Positions 56,627 through 64,000 of a stretch of 64,000 bases of DNA are shown here, in pieces (within the stretch, counting starts at the first letter, position 1; each line of letters starts with the position of its first letter). This DNA comes from Anthoceros angustus. Its lineage: Eukaryota > Plantae > Anthocerotophyta. The position numbers and the translations under genes are program-made. The notes beneath the pieces are model-generated. The model was not told the DNA's origin. It saw nothing but the letters and a program-made list of their open reading frames with translations, and made no database searches. The stretch lies in assembly GCA_010909165.1 (NCBI GenBank), contig MU008181.1:186001-250000 (forward strand). The letters run 5' to 3'.

Positions 56627-59105
56627 AATGTATTTGCATCCGTATGCCCGTGAGAATTATTGTAGTGAACCAGCACATCTTGCCATGCCTGTATGATCAT
56701 GTGCCCGCCCTGCATCTCGTTTTGCCAGACACTAGCAGAATTTGTATGGGTCTATAGGCAGGCACTAACTAACCTTCTGAATTTGCATGTGTGAATGTGT
56801 GTACTACCCCCGGTAAGTTAGAGCAATATTGAACAAAACATTTCTTCAATGCAAAGGGAGAGATTCATTCCATTCTCATCATCTTTGTTACGATGAGAGG
56901 TAGATAAGTATTAGCCATCCGCATCCTTGTCTCACTTTTGACAGGATGGAGCAAACGCATTAAGGACTCCTCTACTAAAGGACTACCACCTCGTCTATTG
57001 GAGTTCTCCAAAGATGTGATCCCTCCAAAATACGGAGGCACTACCTAGTTTACTTGTTGGACATTGATACATCAAAAAACATAATGAGTTAAAATATACT
57101 TAAACAATATATAAATATATATAACATACAGGTGAAGATGGATCTACTATTATATCTATTATAGGACCTTCCCTAAAAAAAATCTTCTTGTAACTCAACT
57201 CCTTTGAAAGAAATTCGCTTTCTCTTTGAAACAAGGAGGCGGCTTGTTCCTGATCTATCTTTAAGTAAAATGCCTAAGGAGAATTTTGCGGAGGGATCAA
57301 AAAGGTGCCCTTGAAATTTACAATTACTCACACAGAGCAAAGATGGGGATTTGTCCTCCCACACCCCCACTGAGCCGGCAACTCACAGACGTAAGCGAAA
57401 CAATGAGCAGGCCAAATCCTGTTCATCTGGCCACCCTGGGAATGCAGCTCCTGCGAGGAAGGAGTTGGAAGTGAGATCTCCAGGAGATGGCAAATTTATA
57501 TGGGAGACATACAAGTGCCTTACTCACTCCTAGCCCGGTTATATTAGTTAGTACTCCAAAGGGTTCTTAGTGTGGGTGCCCCTTGATACATCGGAAATAT
57601 TAACTCAAACCTTGTGCCTCCCAGAGTATAAGAAGGGAGTTCAAAATTAATATTGTATGGGAGACATACAAGTGCCTTGCTCACTCCTGGCCCGTTTGTT
57701 TTTGTTACCACGAGTACTGTACACTACAATCCTGTTTGGCTTTGCTTATTGAGTTTGCCCCAATCTAATAATTGAGAAAGATTTAACCTTGACTCACGTT
57801 GCTCTAACATATGGCTGATAGCTGATGATTTCTCCATTATGATGTGGCACATGAACATCAAACTCCTTCTCATGAAAGCAAGAAGACCATTTTCACCACT
57901 CCATGATACCGCTATATCCTGCCCTCTTGTTTTCCTCGAATTGTGATTTTCTGCACGATGAATGTGCGCGGTGGTTGTGAGCATAAAACCTAGCTATGCT
58001 CCGAATCGTTCACAACCACCTAGCTATGCTCCGAATCCTACCTATCCATGAGCTAAGGATTCCATTATGTAGAAGCTCATATATCCTTATTTTCCTTCCA
58101 TTTCAAATATTTATTTCTTAAGATAAAGTGATCACATTATAAACCTTTGATATTTATTGAAGGCACATTGAACTAGACACATTTAGCCAGTAGTATCTCC
58201 TCGACATGACGCGTGTCGCATATTGCGCAGGGTTTGTTATGGCAGGATTTTAATCGAATTCTCGAATTCAACCCTAATATATGTACTCCAGACGATGTAC
58301 CTAGTCCCGTTCATGTAACCATCAATGACGATTCCAGCCCCCTCCTCGTGACAAATCCTTGCTGTGCGAGCTGGCACATGCCCATGTACCTACATCTCAT
58401 GCGGCTATTCCTCAAGCCATATTCATTTTAACGATTACCGTAAACCTCGTTGCCGACGTCCAGATACATAAGACTAATACAATGCCCTCGTTGCGCACGT
58501 CCAGATACATAAGACAATGCAATGGGTCCTACCCCGACCAACTCGACAGCAAACAACCAAGATATGTCCAGTGTCCAGACATACCAATAGAAAGTCAGAC
58601 TTTTGTGCGCCGTATTGAAATGCACTCCTCCTACTGCCAGCATCGAATGTAATCAGAGCACCAATTGCCTCCAAACGCACTGGAACTGTGCGTGATGCCT
58701 CCCCCCGAAGAGAACATTCCAGCCACAGCCTACCTAGTGCCGGATCCGGCATGCCTTCCGCATACATTATTTACACAGCTGAAGAAAGACATCTCCGAAC
58801 CTCGGATGCAGAGCAGGTAATCGGAATATGGAACCCGCTCTGCTCTGGGCGAGTGGCAACCTACATGCTGGTCGGCCACTTCCCTACCCCCTGCTCCTGT
58901 TCCCATCCACAGACAAACGGATGGAAGACTCTAGCTCTGTTTAACTACTGCCGTTGATGTTCGTCTCGCTCTTCAGATCGTGTCGTGTCAGGCTGCAAAA
59001 ATATCAACCAGCTGCCGCGCAGTGAAGTGTCAGCCAACACTTCCACTTACACCCAGCCCTGACAAATCACCGCCTCCGTCGCCTGGCCCTCCTTCCAAGT
59101 TCCAG

Positions 59106-59558
59106 CTAGCTGCTCGGCTTGCTGGCCTGCCGTGCGCTGTCGGCCTCCCGGGGCTGGTGCGAGGTAGGCAAGTCACTTCCGCTGTCCACCGGGTGAGCGA
59201 GGTAGGTAGGCTTCTCCTCCCCGGCCATGATGACACACACGCTCGGACTTTTCCCCTCCATCGGCGCCATGGCGACGTCGTCGCCCCGGGGCCGGGGATC
59301 CGTCCCCGCACCCTGAGACTGAAAGAAGAGCGGATTTGTGGCGGGATAGTGCATCGCCTGCGCCTGCTGCCGCCGAAACGCTGCCTCCACCCGATCTCGT
59401 TGCCGCTTCCTCCAGCACAGGCAGCATATGAAGAAGAGCGTGAGCGTCAGGATCAACGCCATCCCCGCCACCCCCGTCACGAAATACACCACCGCAGAGT
59501 GCGCCGGCACGCAATCCCCCGCCGCACTCATCCCATAGTAGCGGCACCGCTGGCCCAT
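59106..59558 (-). CDS. GLUTAMINE DUMPER (GDU)-like single-pass membrane protein, ~150 aa
   Basis: HSAVVYFVTGVAGMALILTLTLFFICCLCWRK parallels the GDU transmembrane segment HSPVPYLFGGLAAMLGLIAFALLILACSYWR. C-terminal VCVIMAGEEKPTYLAHP matches the VIMAG motif. The start codon (59558 or 59531) is uncertain. Confidence 0.75.
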   Translation of the reverse strand: MGQRCRYYGMSAAGDCVPAHSAVVYFVTGVAGMALILTLTLFFICCLCWRKRQRDRVEAAFRRQQAQAMHYPATNPLFFQSQGAGTDPRPRGDDVAMAPMEGKSPSVCVIMAGEEKPTYLAHPVDSGSDLPTSHQPREADSARQASKPSS

Positions 59559-61574
59559 CTGTGCCGAACCTGCTCCATCACACATCCACAAAATCATACG
59601 AGGACGCAAGCTTCGGGCATGGCATATCAACCCCTCCCCTAACATGCAAGCTTCGGGCAAATTTCTCATCCAACAAAACAAGTGCTCACCATCCAGCACC
59701 CGCCGTGTCTGGCTCCCTCCATCCTCCGCAATTTGTTTGGACAATCTCGTCAAGGCAATTCCCCACGTTCTCATGTCAAAAACACTCACACAGCCTGCCT
59801 GCCTGCCTGCCTGCGCGATTGCTTGCTTCAAAATCTGCGAGACGAGAACAGAGACTGCAGTCGGATTGAAATTCCGCACCACCTCAAATCCAAGAAGAGG
59901 AAACAGAACCGTCGCAAACGCCAATCGCCTACCTCTCCACAACTTCAGAAGCGGAGGCCTGAGACGATGGTGCACAAGCCAGCAGCTCACGCTGTGCTCC
60001 CACTGGCTGGAATGGTGGTTATCCGGAATCCCGCTGGCTCACGCTGCCCGCGAGCTGGGAGGAGCGGACGAGTGGAAGACACGCCTCGTCTCGGTCGGGC
60101 AGCGATGGGGAGGACCCGAGAGGGAGCGAGCCAGAGGAGGGAGCCCAGGTTCCAACACCGGGGCAGAGGCTGCCAGTGTCGCTTCTCCGGGACTTCAAAA
60201 CCTGGGCTTCAGAGACTCCCACGCCTGTGCAGTACATACATTCATTGACTAGTTTAGGCGACCATACACGGATGATCGAGGCAAGGCAGGACAGCCGGCA
60301 CAAACCCACGCCCCTGCACCGGCACCGGCGCCGGCGCGGCGCCGGCACCCGCACCGGCGGGGAGCCACCGGGCTATACGGGCTCCAAGGGGCGCTTGGCG
60401 GGCTTTGGGGCGGGGAGCGGCTAGACTGGGCGCGGCGCCACGCCGACGGGACACCGACGGTGGAGCGTGGCGGGCCGGGGAGATCTGTCTCGGTTTGCCT
60501 GGGCTGGAGTCCGACTGTTGCTCCCAGCGCTCGGTCCCGAGTGCCGCCCACATCTCCCGGGATCTTCCCTATCCGAATTCCCGCTTCCTGCGCCTGATAA
60601 TAAACCTTTGGGATAATCCAGCTGGAGGTGATTATATATTACGTACTGTCGGATAGGATATGTGGGAATAATGTGTACATGGACTAGGACTTTGACTGAG
60701 GTATATACTGTGATTCGTGAATATGTGAATGAGAGGCACGTATGTGCTGGTCAAGTATGTCTGTCAGGAGAGACCGACCTCTTGTCCTGCCCAGTCATCA
60801 GTCGTTTGCCTGCAGATATGCGGTCCGGGAGTCAGGAAGAGGAAATAGAAAAGAGGAGTACTGTCCCGGGTCCCCAAGTTTGAAAGCGGGCAATAAAAGA
60901 TGAGCAGGCATTGCGATTCCACAGCACCCCGAGCAGTGAATGCTATGCGCTCTCATCACCCATGTCTGGTACAGCACAGGGCTCGCTCTCATGTCTTTGC
61001 CACCAGGCTTTCAAGCCGAAAGAGATTGTGGGTGGTGGGCTCTGCCCATCCTGCCCCGTTCTACCCACCAGCACTTCTGCAAAGTCTCGACGTAAAGCAC
61101 GTAACGACCGAAGCAGCAGGAGTGAATTCAATGTCTCGTCTCAGTGACCAACATGAGAGGAAGCCAGGTTTTGTGGACCATGGGGGTTCTAGTTTAGTGC
61201 TCTCTCCGTCACCAACTGCGGAGATTCCCCAACTTAGGAAACGCCTTCTGTCAGTCAGGCTTTCACGCTCATTTTCTGCACTTTCTGACTCCTGCTGGCA
61301 TGAATTCACACGTGTTTCATGCTTCTAACATCCATGGAGAAACTTCAAGAATACTCGACTGATGAGAGAGCCTCGTTCTGGAAGGCTTTGCTCCAAGAGG
61401 ACGCTTGAGCATCTTTCTGTAATCAAGGCGAGAAAACTTCTTGGCCGCTGGATCACTGGCATGTACACACGTACCTTGTGTTGACTGCAACGGAGACAAG
61501 AAAGGCGGATGAAATTCCAGGCTCCGCATATGCTTCTTGGTCCATGCATACTGCATCAAGAGGATTTTGTGACA

Positions 61575-61780
61575 CTTCTCTACAAAATTACAGAAATGCT
61601 GAAACAACTTCTCCACAAAAATACAAAAATGCTGAAACAACTTCTCTACAAAATTGAAAGGCTCAAGTTGATATGGCACTTCCATCTGCATCAAACCCTC
61701 TTTCCTTTGGAAGGAGTGGACAACAGAAATCAACACAACTAGGCGCAAGGAGTGGACAACAGAAATCAACCCAACTAGGC
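61575..61780. repeat. Short tandem repeats: ~33-bp unit x3 and 36-bp unit x2
   Basis: aaatgctgaaacaacttctc(c/t)acaaaa.. and aaggagtggacaacagaaatcaac(a/c)caactaggcgc. Confidence 0.85.
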
Positions 61781-61984
61781 GCATCATACAAACACGGGTC
61801 ACACGGGTCCAAAATTGAACAATCGAAATCAACCCACCAAGCTTTGCGAGAGTTCAGTCCGGAAGGCAACAGAGATAATTAAAAGAATGTGGAGGAGTCC
61901 CTCACTTGTCAAATCACAAAATTGGCCAAGCTGGAACGCCCGTTCTACATCTGACAATCTGTCTAACCGTGAACTGAACCTAAT

Positions 61985-63400
61985 CTACAGTTCATCGTGA
62001 ACCTCACCCAGAGACTCCTCCTGTCCAAGAACCGAGTCAATCTCCTGCACGGCAGCCTCTGCTGCTTCAGCCTTTTCTTCCGGGAGGAGTTCCTCTTCAT
62101 CTTCCTCATCATCGTCGTCATCCTTGTTGGCTTCCACCTCGGCCTTTCTCTTGGCCTCTTCTTCCTCCTCAACCTTCTTCTCGGCCTCAAACTTCGGCTT
62201 CCACGTCTCGTCCCTGATCTTTCTGGCCACCTCCTCGTCATCCGCGATCAAGATGTTGTCAAACAAGATGTCCTTCTGCATCGTCCAGATCTCGATTGCC
62301 ACCGCGGTGACGGGCTCCAGCGACGGCTTCTCGAGCTCGAAGTAGTCGGGGTTGGGAATCTGCTGGGGTGCCCACTTGCCCTTGTACGCAGGGTTCTCGA
62401 TGAGCGGAGCCTTCCACTTACCCTTGTACGCAGGGTTCTTCTTCAGCGGCCTCCTCCACTGTCCGCAGCCGGGTGCTTCGGCACACTTGGGGTTAGCCAC
62501 CTTCGGCGGCTCCCACACGCCATCCTCCTCGTCATCCCAGTCCTCCGGCTTCACAGCCTCCTCATCGTCCACCTCATCGGGCTCATCATCCAGCCATCCC
62601 TCCGGCTTAACCGCCTCCTCATCCGCAACCTCCCTAGGCGCCTCCTCGTCCCAGTCCTCCGGCTTGCTCGCCTCGGGATCCGGAATCTTGGCCCGCTCAT
62701 CCCAGTCCTCCGGCTTCTTGTCCTCCGGATCAGGAATAGTGGCGGGAGGAATGACAGCCGGCTTGAAGTCGGTCTGAGACAGCAGATCCGCCGTCTTCTT
62801 CACCTCCCCGTCCACCAGAATGCTCACGCTGTGGTTCCCATGCAGCACCGCCGTATACACATGCGACAGCTTGTCTCCGGCCGGCACCGGGGGATTGGCC
62901 AGGTGGTGCTCCACCACCTCCCCGGTCTTCGGGTTCTTGTGCCGGAAGATGAAGTGCACCTTGTTCGTAGACCCGCACTTGTCCGGCCCGAACATGACGC
63001 TGTAAGGCGACGAGTTGTCGAGCAGCGAGGGCTTCCACCCCGCGGCCTGCGGCTCCAAGAACTTGAGGTACGCCCCTCCGCATTGCAGCCCGCTCTGCAG
63101 CCGCACGTCATACTGCAACACCACGGTCCCCTCCCCGAACACCACCTTCTCCGGCACCTCCACGGCTATGGCGTGCTTCCTGGCCACGTCGTTGGCCAGA
63201 AGGCCGTAATCCTCGTGCCCCTTGCTGGCCTCGTGCTTCCACGTTCCCTCGTACTCCGCCTTCTCGGACGGCACCCAGCGGCCCTCCCACGTCTCGTCGA
63301 AGGGCTCGTAGAACGCCGGCCCCGCCCCGGCCACCGCGACCGCAGCGGCAGCCAGGCACAGCAGCAGCTGATGCATCATAGTCACGCTCCGCCGAGCCAT
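61985..63400 (-). CDS. Calnexin-type ER lectin chaperone, intronless, ~471 aa, no transmembrane domain, acidic tail ending HDEL
   Basis: Signal peptide MARRSVTMMHQLLLCLAAAAVAVAGAG. Calnexin-specific lumenal sequence LQYDVRLQSGLQCGGAYLKFL, MFGPDKCGSTNKVHFIFRHKNPK, P-domain IPDPEDKKPEDWDE repeats, CAEAPGCG, EIWTMQKDILFDNILI. Then KFEAEKKVEEEEE...DDDDDEEDEEE...GEVHDEL*. Confidence 0.92.
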   Translation of the reverse strand: MARRSVTMMHQLLLCLAAAAVAVAGAGPAFYEPFDETWEGRWVPSEKAEYEGTWKHEASKGHEDYGLLANDVARKHAIAVEVPEKVVFGEGTVVLQYDVRLQSGLQCGGAYLKFLEPQAAGWKPSLLDNSSPYSVMFGPDKCGSTNKVHFIFRHKNPKTGEVVEHHLANPPVPAGDKLSHVYTAVLHGNHSVSILVDGEVKKTADLLSQTDFKPAVIPPATIPDPEDKKPEDWDERAKIPDPEASKPEDWDEEAPREVADEEAVKPEGWLDDEPDEVDDEEAVKPEDWDDEEDGVWEPPKVANPKCAEAPGCGQWRRPLKKNPAYKGKWKAPLIENPAYKGKWAPQQIPNPDYFELEKPSLEPVTAVAIEIWTMQKDILFDNILIADDEEVARKIRDETWKPKFEAEKKVEEEEEAKRKAEVEANKDDDDDEEDEEELLPEEKAEAAEAAVQEIDSVLGQEESLGEVHDEL

Positions 63401-64000
63401 GGCTGGCGTCCTCGCAGCTCTCTCGCACAGGGCAGCCCCGCGTCGCAATCCTCGCCCTCGGGCCCGGGCCTCGCAGGGAGAAGCTGGCGGAAAGATAGCG
63501 GCAGCTGGCGAGGAGTCAGTGGTGACGCGCCCCGACCCTAAGATGAGCTCGTCAAGCCATGCATACATGTAGCATGCATTGCCCCGATATCGAGCAAAGG
63601 CAAAGAAGCTCCCAGAACCCGGAAACCGAGAACGCGACCCTGGTTGGTGGCCGCCTTGCCCTAACTCTCTCCCATAACGTGGATTCCACGTACCCTCTCC
63701 CTTTGTCTCGTCAAGGGGATCACGCCAAGCACGCCTCGGCCCCATCCGGCGACCGTCCCTCGACCACGCTCGAGTACCTGCATCAGATTCCACAGATCAA
63801 TCTCACATGGCTGTTGTGATTGTCCCGTAACGGGTTTTTCTTGGGCTTTCTCTTGCTCCTGCTCGGCTTATTTGCCCGCTATGTGATTGTTTGATTGACG
63901 ACACCCTTGTTGAGTGTGGGTATGCGTTCAGGAGACGGAATATGCTCCCGTCACACCAACACGATTCCGGAAGCCGAGCGAAACGAATCGCCGGAACAGC

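What the first reader, a model, noticed from the sequence alone, without database searches (positions are those of the whole stretch)
61985..63400. Soluble calnexin: calnexin lumenal domain with a calreticulin-style acidic tail and HDEL
Seen: the lectin and P domains are calnexin-type (long P domain with CAEAPGCG; HKNPKTGEVVEHHL; EIWTMQ). Exactly where plant calnexins continue into a juxtamembrane helix, transmembrane span and cytosolic tail, this ORF runs into E/D-rich sequence and stops at HDEL. The gene is intronless and very GC-rich. Established: calnexin is a type I membrane protein, while calreticulin is the soluble paralogue with an acidic Ca-binding C-domain and HDEL/KDEL. A terminal HDEL-stop is very unlikely by chance. 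Inference: a calnexin duplicate, possibly a retrocopy, that converged on calreticulin architecture, i.e. a third type of ER lectin chaperone. I know of no characterised plant example.
Basis: partly seen in the sequence, partly recalled or inferred. Interest (0 to 1): 0.75.

Follow-up and report, generated by a model that had tools for sequence, protein, structure and literature searches.

The report
Soluble HDEL-tailed calnexin of hornworts
A hornwort gene encodes a calnexin, normally a membrane-anchored ER folding helper, that has no membrane anchor and ends in an acidic tail with the ER-retrieval signal HDEL; it is transcribed and conserved in other hornworts, and it seems undescribed in plants.

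Summary
Window 61985-63400 (minus strand) is one uninterrupted 471-codon ORF. It has a signal peptide, a complete calnexin-type lumenal domain (4+4 P-domain repeats, Cys loop, lectin-site residues all kept) and no transmembrane span. The 71-residue tail is 44% Asp/Glu and ends in HDEL.

It belongs to the calnexin clade, not the calreticulin clade. It scores 378 bits against calnexin 1JHN and 163 bits against calreticulin, and it lies inside the land-plant CNX clade (support 100/99).

It is a real, maintained gene:
- A spliced-RNA assembly of the same species carries it colinearly across the stop codon.
- Three related species have about 94%-identical copies. Their indels are in-frame inside the CDS and frame-breaking just outside it.
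- The hornwort Nothoceros aenigmaticus has a 74%-identical transcript with the same TM-less tail ending in HDEL.

Contig fragments from the related species also show a second, canonical-looking CNX paralogue, and a calreticulin-type contig lies in the window species' own run (also seen in organism C). So this looks like a third ER lectin chaperone, not a replacement. The paralogue's membrane anchor was not seen.

The "retrocopy" idea is plausible but unproven. The architecture is not unique: at least three unnamed microbial-eukaryote CNX lineages independently carry acidic tails ending in KDEL.

I found no paper describing this. Verdict: a new variant of a known kind, of moderate interest.

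The parts
61985..63400 (-). Complete intronless CDS of the soluble calnexin (471 aa plus TAG stop at 61985-61987)
   Evidence: ORF listing and sequence. Pfam PF00262 E 3.6e-141. An RNA contig matches colinearly with 0 differences.
63320..63400 (-). Signal peptide, about residues 1-27 (MARRSV...AVAGAG, then PAFYEPF)
   Evidence: This is the only strongly hydrophobic stretch. AF2 models a helix at 3-23 ahead of the first lectin strand. It aligns with the signal peptides of canonical CNX. The cleavage site is inferred, not predicted by a dedicated tool.
62243..63319 (-). Calnexin-type lumenal domain, about residues 28-386: lectin beta-sandwich interrupted by the long P-domain arm (about residues 215-355) with 4 type-1 and 4 type-2 repeats and the C306-C312 loop
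   Evidence: Aligns to canine calnexin 1JHN over residues 45-407, 378 bits. Foldseek's best match is 1JHN, E 3.7e-35. Repeat counts. Columns invariant across 46 CNX include C107, Y111, K113, Y133, M136, C142, E164, C306, C312 and E370.
62117..62242 (-). C-terminal helix of the lumenal domain running into a charged linker (about residues 387-428, DDEEVARKIRDETWKPKFEAEKKVEEEEEAKRKAEVEANK). Homology to canonical CNX ends at about residue 402-408
   Evidence: AF2 helix 389-428 with high pLDDT to about 430. tblastn and MAFFT alignment with canonical CNX.
61988..62116 (-). Lineage-specific distal tail (residues 429-471): acidic run DDDDDEEDEEE, conserved segment LLPEEKAEAAEAAVQEIDSVLGQ, then a flexible end with HDEL
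   Evidence: Composition. The segment LLPEEKAEAA..EID.V and HDEL are shared with Nothoceros P0001. AF2: 429-440 low confidence, helix 441-459 at pLDDT about 70, 463-471 below 50. Only in-frame indels here in related species (9 nt at 62071, 3 nt at 62170).
61575..61984 (-). Transcribed 3' flank (3'UTR, at least 410 nt). The contig ends inside a 33-nt tandem repeat, so the true 3' end is unknown
   Evidence: X1 contig piece 61575-63679. Tandem repeat at 61574-61655. The organism E orthologue has indels here of 2, 1, 3, 1, 3, +1 and 1 nt, most of them not multiples of three.
63401..63679 (-). Transcribed 5' leader with a cluster of upstream ATGs at 63558-63579, one of them (63568) in frame
   Evidence: X1 contig reaches 63679. 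Sequence read. A 1-nt deletion at 63436 in organisms D and E breaks the upstream frame, so 63400 is the conserved start.

Best explanation
This is a functional hornwort gene for a soluble, ER-lumenal calnexin paralogue. The signal peptide takes it into the ER. [quoted passage not shown] Its intact calnexin lectin site should bind monoglucosylated N-glycans on folding glycoproteins. Its long four-repeat P-domain arm should recruit the usual folding partners (PDI-type oxidoreductase, cyclophilin). The acidic tail probably adds low-affinity Ca2+ binding, as the C-domain of calreticulin does. In effect it is a calnexin working in calreticulin's topological niche, so it is expected to serve soluble or membrane-distal glycans rather than membrane-proximal ones. 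It arose from a CNX-clade gene before the window species and Nothoceros diverged, when the juxtamembrane/TM/cytosolic part was replaced by a new tail. Shown here: sequence architecture, clade, transcription, conservation and the constraint pattern. Inferred: ER localisation, glycan binding, Ca2+ binding, client range and mode of origin.
For: Architecture and intact catalytic and structural residues. CNX, not CRT: 378 versus 163 bits, and it lies inside the embryophyte CNX clade at 100/99 with the hornwort pair at 100/100. Transcription: run X1 holds spliced contigs on the neighbouring gene, so it is RNA, and a contig matches 61575-63679 with 0 differences, no gaps and no joint before the stop. 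Conservation: orthologues in organisms C, D and E are about 94-95% identical at nucleotide level. All CDS indels shown for the orthologue contigs are multiples of 3 (9, 3, +3, 6), while the flanks carry 1- and 2-nt indels. For records 11 and 17 the listed gaps account for all their gaps. Of the listed substitutions, 12 codons are synonymous and 5 nonsynonymous, with 13 of 19 changes at third positions. Nothoceros aenigmaticus P0001 is 74% identical over full length, TM-less, shares the tail motif and ends in HDEL. No TM exon exists in the window. A CRT-type contig in organisms A and C, and a second CNX-type contig in organisms C, D and E, show that it is an additional chaperone (loose ends decoded by hand).
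Against: There is no protein-level or localisation evidence. HDEL conservation in the three close relatives could not be read, because their substitutions near the stop were among the 277 rows not shown. Contigs cannot exclude a rare isoform spliced onto a TM exon outside the window. Nothoceros P0001 is labelled isoform i2, so another isoform exists. The X1 contig leaves the genome at 63679 with 4983 further nucleotides that are not in the window, so the 5' structure is unresolved. The lineage evolves 2-4 times faster than other land-plant CNX (stem 0.20), which could mean relaxed constraint or neofunctionalisation away from the chaperone cycle. The canonical paralogue's TM was not observed, and no such paralogue contig was laid for the window species itself.
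Confidence: 0.8

Rival explanations
1. It is the hornworts' only calnexin. The ancestral membrane CNX itself lost its anchor in this lineage, so hornworts run glycoprotein quality control without a membrane-bound lectin chaperone.
For: Its tree position is compatible with simple orthology to other bryophyte CNX: the AU test does not reject hornwort pair + mosses + liverworts, p 0.334. No full-length canonical CNX attributable to Nothoceros appeared among the 120 best database hits, where every other land-plant group did. No canonical-type CNX contig was laid for the window species in X1.
Against: Contigs from organisms C, D and E carry a second CNX-type sequence about 80% identical at nucleotide level. 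It has canonical-type motifs (APGCGEWKRP, LLSNEFDPSV without the 1-residue insertion of the HDEL type, PLFYESFE) at depths comparable to the HDEL gene. The protein database visibly lacks the close relatives seen in the sequencing runs, so absence there means little.
Confidence: 0.1
2. It is a decaying or functionless retrocopy (processed pseudogene or truncated duplicate) that happens to be transcribed, and HDEL is incidental.
For: The CDS is intronless, whereas canonical bryophyte CNX genes are split. The branch is accelerated. The 5' leader holds several upstream ATGs.
Against: The 471-codon ORF is intact, with every lectin-site and disulfide residue kept. The frame is preserved in three further species, and indels break frame only outside the CDS. 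Listed changes are mostly synonymous. The same tail and HDEL are retained in Nothoceros at 74% identity. It is present in RNA contigs of four species.
Confidence: 0.04
3. The soluble form is only one isoform. An alternative transcript skips the HDEL stop and joins a downstream TM exon, giving a normal membrane calnexin from the same locus.
For: Nothoceros P0001 is Trinity isoform i2, so other isoforms were assembled. Contigs drop rare variants (note).
Against: No CNX-like TM or tail exon exists on either strand in the 62 kb downstream. No joint within the CDS appears in any of four runs except cross-matches from paralogues. The region 60341-61444 downstream has no X1 coverage, and the next transcribed unit is a separate spliced gene. 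The conserved HDEL tail would be pointless in a minor isoform.
Confidence: 0.04

Closest known systems
Plant calnexin (CNX1/CNX2 type; e.g. Marchantia paleacea P0003, Physcomitrium patens P0013)
   Same: The lumenal domain is 62-66% identical over the whole protein. It shares the 4+4 P-domain repeats, the Cys loop CxxAPGCG, the lectin-site residues and the C-terminal helix of the lumenal domain. It lies inside the embryophyte CNX clade.
   Different: It lacks the juxtamembrane segment, the TM helix and the cytosolic tail with its basic C-terminal motif. It has instead an acidic run, a conserved helix-prone segment and HDEL. The CDS is intronless, whereas the Marchantia gene has at least 5 introns, 3 of them in the C-terminal part. 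It has a 1-residue insertion (LLSQTDF versus LLSNDF) and a faster rate.
Calreticulin (CRT1/2 and CRT3 of plants; human CALR)
   Same: Topology and sorting logic: signal peptide, soluble lumenal lectin chaperone, acidic C-terminus, H/KDEL retrieval signal.
   Different: It is a different paralogue clade (163 versus 378 bits). CRT has 3+3 repeats and no Cys loop in the arm. The acidic part here is short (an 11-residue D/E run; tail 44% D/E over 71 residues), so any Ca2+ buffering capacity is probably smaller. That last point is inference.
Engineered soluble calnexin and membrane-anchored calreticulin in mammalian cells (work of the Williams and Bergeron laboratories, 1995-2000; recalled from memory, not in the searchable library)
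   Same: The same design: a calnexin lumenal domain released from the membrane. In those experiments, as I recall them, topology rather than lectin specificity largely set the client spectrum.
   Different: Those were artificial truncations. This is a natural, conserved gene with its own retrieval signal and acidic tail.
Unnamed CNX-type proteins with acidic tails ending in KDEL from metagenome and transcriptome assemblies (P0136, P0140, P0219; P0258 ends in QDEL)
   Same: A CNX-type lumenal domain with a Cys loop in the arm (four type-1 repeats counted in P0136 and P0140, two in the divergent P0219), no TM, and an acidic tail with a retrieval signal.
   Different: They are non-plant lineages, 40-48% identical. 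Each is sister to TM-bearing CNX, so each is an independent conversion (4 changes on the tree). Their organisms are unknown and none is described in a paper that I could find.

Membership tests
Calreticulin/calnexin superfamily (Pfam PF00262) | Legume-lectin-like beta-sandwich interrupted by a proline-rich hairpin arm | tested here: met
   PF00262 E 3.6e-141 over the full profile. AF2 pLDDT 90.2. Foldseek's best match is 1JHN, E 3.7e-35.
Calnexin clade (as opposed to calreticulin) | Four type-1 plus four type-2 P-domain repeats, and a disulfide loop at the arm tip | tested here: met
   4 KPE[DG]W and 4 NPx[CY] motifs, and C306-x5-C312.
Calnexin clade (as opposed to calreticulin) | Closer in sequence and phylogeny to CNX than to CRT | tested here: met
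   378 bits to calnexin 1JHN versus 163 bits to the best calreticulin. It is nested in the embryophyte CNX clade at 100/99. No CRT outgroup was available, so the tree alone does not test CRT placement.
Calnexin clade (as opposed to calreticulin) | Glucose-binding and structural residues (canine Y165, K167, Y186, M189, E217, E426; C161-C195; numbering from memory of the 1JHN paper) | tested here: met
   The window equivalents Y111, K113, Y133, M136, E164, E370 and C107/C142 are conserved and invariant across 46 CNX. Glycan binding itself was not tested.
Canonical calnexin (type I membrane protein) | Single C-terminal transmembrane helix | tested here: not met
   No hydrophobic window beyond the signal peptide. 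No TM exon in the window. The RNA contig is unspliced across the stop.
Canonical calnexin (type I membrane protein) | Cytosolic tail with a basic C-terminal ER-retention motif (RKPRRE type; PMC12548239) | tested here: not met
   The protein ends ...SLGEVHDEL.
Soluble ER-resident proteins retrieved by the K/HDEL receptor (ERD2) | Cleavable signal peptide plus C-terminal H/KDEL exposed on a flexible end | tested here: met
   N-terminal hydrophobic h-region. Terminal HDEL with pLDDT below 50 for residues 463-471. HDEL is also present in the Nothoceros orthologue. Actual retrieval is not testable with these tools.
Processed retrocopy | Intronless copy of a multi-exon parent, with a poly(A) remnant and target-site duplications | tested here: inconclusive
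   The CDS is intronless, while Marchantia and Physcomitrium CNX genes are split. No poly(A) tract or flanking duplication was seen on reading the flanks. The hornwort parent gene's structure is unknown, and the event is old enough for such marks to have decayed.

The most novel reading that the evidence does not exclude
Hornworts maintain a three-member ER lectin-chaperone set: calreticulin, membrane calnexin and a soluble HDEL-calnexin. In this reading the soluble CNX has a distinct client range or role, for example a long-arm lumenal chaperone or Ca2+ buffer tied to hornwort-specific secretory biology. The same anchor-to-KDEL switch has also happened at least four times in eukaryotes, which would make CNX membrane anchoring an evolutionarily labile trait rather than a defining one.
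Probability: 0.45. Interest if true: 0.65.

Novelty: new variant of a known kind. Interest (0 to 1): 0.52.

Why it matters
Textbooks define calnexin by its membrane anchor and calreticulin by being soluble. As I recall them, engineered swaps in mammalian cells suggested that this topology, more than lectin specificity, decides which glycoproteins each one serves. A natural, conserved and expressed soluble calnexin sitting beside calreticulin is evolution's own version of that experiment. It allows a direct question: what does a four-repeat calnexin arm do in the lumen that calreticulin's three-repeat arm does not? It also adds a lineage-specific ER component to hornworts, and it flags that database entries annotated as 'calnexin' cannot be assumed to be membrane proteins. 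The effect on the field would be modest unless a distinct function is found.

Tried and rejected
1. Tail origin. MAFFT lined the distal tail up with the canonical juxtamembrane segment (QEIDSVLGQEES versus EQIDAVLDKAES). A shuffle test against 27 canonical segments gave z 0.13 (window) and 1.78 (Nothoceros), which is not significant, so I dropped the claim.

2. Database search with the tail alone (residues 403-471). It gave 770 candidates, none with E <= 10, which is uninformative.

3. Search for a hornwort canonical CNX using the C-terminal region of Marchantia CNX. Only 5 liverwort hits came back, because the tool needs shared 5-residue words. This led nowhere.

4. P0015 was the nearest canonical sequence by path length. 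It groups with ferns and has GC3 0.50, so it is not a hornwort paralogue.

5. A TM or tail exon elsewhere in the window: none found by tblastn at E <= 1.

6. Upstream in-frame ATG at 63568, which would add 56 residues. I rejected it as the start because relatives carry a 1-nt indel at 63436 and orthologues start at the signal peptide.

7. The 514-aa ORF on the plus strand (61997-63541) is the antisense shadow of a GC3-rich gene, not a gene. This is my reading of it.

8. The bacterial promoter/terminator scan is irrelevant for a plant nuclear gene.

9. Notes of this scan searched for 'calnexin', 'HDEL' and 'KDEL': none found.

10. Literature searches for hornwort calnexin, soluble calnexin and CNX lacking a TM found no relevant paper.

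Full report
**What is in the sequence**

On the minus strand, 63400-61985 is one open frame of 471 codons ending in TAG, with GC 0.62 and GC3 0.81. Pfam's Calreticulin family (PF00262) covers residues 30-385 over the entire profile, E 3.6e-141.

The protein starts with a typical signal sequence (MARRSVTMMHQLLLCLAAAAVAVAGAG). This is the only strongly hydrophobic 19-residue stretch in the protein. The last 71 residues are 44% Asp/Glu, include the run DDDDDEEDEEE, and end in HDEL-stop.

**Calnexin or calreticulin**

- Against solved structures, it scores 378 bits to the calnexin lumenal domain 1JHN (residues 45-407) and 163 bits to the best calreticulin.
- It has four KPE[DG]W and four NPx[CY] repeats plus the arm-tip Cys loop C306-C312, the calnexin pattern.
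- The residues I recall as the glucose-site and disulfide residues of 1JHN correspond to Y111, K113, Y133, M136, E164, E370 and C107/C142 here. These are invariant columns in an alignment of 46 diverse calnexins.
- An AlphaFold2 model (pLDDT 90.2) has the beta-sandwich and the long arm. Its best Foldseek match is 1JHN, E 3.7e-35.
- In a careful IQ-TREE analysis of the lumenal domain only, the protein sits inside the embryophyte CNX clade at 100/99. No calreticulin sequence was available as an outgroup, so exclusion from the CRT clade rests on the score gap and the repeat architecture.

**Whose gene is it, and is it conserved**

The best database hit is P0001: 476 aa, 73% identity by BLASTP (74% in the MAFFT alignment), 100% coverage. 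It is a transcriptome protein of the hornwort Nothoceros aenigmaticus. It also has a signal peptide and no TM. Its acidic tail shares the segment LLPEEKAEAA..EID.V with the window protein and also ends in HDEL. Earlier notes on this window call its PPR genes hornwort-type.

All other top hits are canonical plant calnexins of 530-560 aa with TM and tail. None of the other 119 ends in H/K/RDEL.

The two hornwort proteins form a 100/100 pair with a stem of 0.20 substitutions per site, 2-4 times the stems of other land-plant groups. Their exact position is unresolved (67/34). An AU test does not reject joining them to mosses plus liverworts (p 0.334). So the time of origin relative to the land-plant radiation is open, but it predates the split between the window species and Nothoceros.

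**Transcription and constraint (all runs are Logan contigs)**

Run X1 is from the window's own species (organism A). On the neighbouring gene it holds a contig with 120- and 153-nt skips. The first has CT..AC ends, which is a GT..AG intron on the minus strand. X1 has no coverage at 60341-61444. So X1 is RNA.

A 7088-nt X1 contig matches 61575-63679 with no differences, no gaps and no joint. That means the whole CDS, the stop codon and 410 nt beyond it are transcribed colinearly. The contig ends inside a 33-nt tandem repeat, so the true 3' end is unknown.

Runs of three related species (organisms D, C and E) carry orthologous contigs:
- Organism D: 73 differences over 1376 nt.
- Organism C: 39 differences over 781 nt.
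- Organism E: 57 differences over 958 nt.

Indels inside the CDS are 9 nt (62071), 3 nt (62170), +3 nt (63128) and 6 nt (63320). For records 11 and 17 the listed gaps account for all their gaps. In contrast, the 3' flank of organism E has indels of 2, 1, 3, 1, 3, +1 and 1 nt, and a 1-nt deletion lies at 63436, 36 nt upstream of the ATG. That pattern brackets a conserved coding frame from about 63400 to between 62071 and 61891. It also disqualifies the in-frame upstream ATG at 63568.

Of the 19 substitutions listed inside the CDS, 13 are at third positions. They amount to 12 synonymous and 5 nonsynonymous codon changes. Only the best-supported rows were shown, and 277 were hidden. For that reason I could not read the HDEL codons of the three relatives.

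**Is there also a normal calnexin and a calreticulin**

Nothing in the window resembles the juxtamembrane, TM or tail part of canonical CNX (tblastn).

In one search, additional contigs from organisms C, D and E align at about 79-84% identity to parts of the gene and then run on with different sequence. Decoding the 30-letter loose ends by hand gives APGCGEWKRP, LLSNEFDPSV and PLFYESFE. These are canonical-type calnexin motifs, and they lack the one-residue insertion that marks the HDEL type (LLSQTDFKP and LLSDKDFDVP). So these hornworts have a second CNX-type gene. Its C-terminus was not seen.

An X1 contig (also seen in organism C) matches only the repeat motifs. It has 59 instead of 116 nt between them and continues as ...PLIDNPEF, which is the three-repeat calreticulin pattern. 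These are inferences from short strings.

The protein database evidently lacks the close relatives seen in the sequencing runs: no hit above 73% identity appeared even though orthologues about 94% identical at nucleotide level exist. Its silence about a hornwort canonical CNX therefore means little.

**Origin**

The Marchantia paleacea CNX gene spans 3.3 kb. It has one large exon for residues 46-427, followed by three small exons for the juxtamembrane segment, the TM helix and the cytosolic tail. The signal-peptide exon and probably one more small exon lie upstream. The Physcomitrium gene spans 4.1 kb and is also split.

The hornwort protein departs from canonical CNX close to the end of the large Marchantia exon. 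It then carries 45-65 residues of its own. An apparent likeness of its tail to the juxtamembrane segment is not significant.

The gene could therefore be a retrocopy, a partial duplicate that recruited a new 3' end, or a copy that lost its introns. I saw no poly(A) tract or target-site duplication in the flanks. Retrocopy remains a hypothesis.

**Not unique among eukaryotes**

An exhaustive HMMER search of 1.84 billion cluster representatives returned CNX-type proteins from unnamed metagenome or transcriptome eukaryotes that lack a TM and end in acidic tails with KDEL. These are P0136, P0140 and P0219; the fragment P0258 ends in QDEL.

On the tree each is sister to TM-bearing calnexins, giving four independent changes of state including the hornworts. 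Long branches make the non-plant part less certain. P0140 sits on a compact 16.6-kb genomic contig.

**Literature**

Full-text searches found no paper on hornwort calnexin, on a natural soluble calnexin, or on a CNX with K/HDEL. A 2025 paper restates the standard view that plant CNX is a type I membrane protein with a cytosolic retention motif, whereas CRT is soluble (PMC12548239). The classic experiments with engineered soluble calnexin are cited from memory only.

**Mechanism proposed**

The protein is imported co-translationally and its signal peptide is cleaved. It then resides freely in the ER lumen, maintained by ERD2-mediated retrieval through the flexible HDEL end (pLDDT below 50 for residues 463-471).

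It binds monoglucosylated glycans by the conserved lectin site, and the four-repeat arm recruits partners. The acidic run gives some Ca2+ binding. The conserved helix-prone segment 441-459 has an unknown role, possibly a partner-binding site.

All of this is inferred from conservation of the relevant residues and from established knowledge of the calnexin/calreticulin cycle. None of it was tested here.

**Verdict**

'Retrocopy' is unproven and 'third type' is only indirectly supported. The architecture recurs elsewhere in eukaryotes. It is a new variant of a known kind, and I score interest at about 0.5.

Noticed in passing
window 63679 and beyond (minus-strand upstream of the gene): The 7088-nt X1 contig matches the genome only from 61575 to 63679. 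Its other 4983 nt lie 'behind' 63679 and do not match 63680-64000. The junction has no AG acceptor on the minus strand. On the plus strand a GT lies at 63679-63680. It could be a 5'UTR intron with a non-canonical site, an antisense transcript, or a chimeric Logan contig. This is unexplained.
   Followed up: partly
window 63558-63579 (minus strand): Five ATGs lie within 22 nt of the 5' leader. Two open short upstream ORFs and one (63568) is in frame with the CDS. A 1-nt indel at 63436 in related species shows the in-frame extension is not conserved as coding. The cluster may regulate translation.
   Followed up: partly
window 61574-61655 and 61711-61783: Two tandem repeats lie in the 3' flank of the gene: 33 nt x 2.5 copies at 89% matches, and 36 nt x 2 copies at 97% matches. 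The first one ends the RNA contig.
   Followed up: no
window 58501-60230 (minus strand): The neighbouring gene is transcribed and spliced in X1 (introns 59568-59687 and 59780-59932). Conserved contigs exist in organisms C, D and E. The longest ORF has no Pfam match above threshold. It is a separate unit from the calnexin gene.
   Followed up: partly
window 61997-63541 (plus strand): A 514-aa ORF lies antisense to the calnexin CDS. It is the stop-free shadow frame expected opposite a GC3-rich gene, not a gene in its own right.
   Followed up: no
P0136, P0140 (L007:8001-9782), P0219 (L008:93-1505), P0258: These are calnexin-type proteins of unnamed microbial eukaryotes with no TM and acidic tails ending in KDEL or QDEL. 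Each is sister to TM-bearing calnexins. P0140 also has a 140-residue acidic N-terminal extension.
   Followed up: partly
P0131 (labelled Mesotaenium endlicherianum, EukProt): In the CNX tree this zygnematophyte-labelled protein nests inside the liverwort-like group, next to P0024, instead of outside land plants. This could be contamination of that proteome or a long-branch effect (end branch 0.33).
   Followed up: no
P0132 / P0289 (Ceratodon purpureus, partial): The moss Ceratodon has a second, divergent CNX-like gene, 55% identical to the window protein and annotated as partial. It was not examined further.
   Followed up: no
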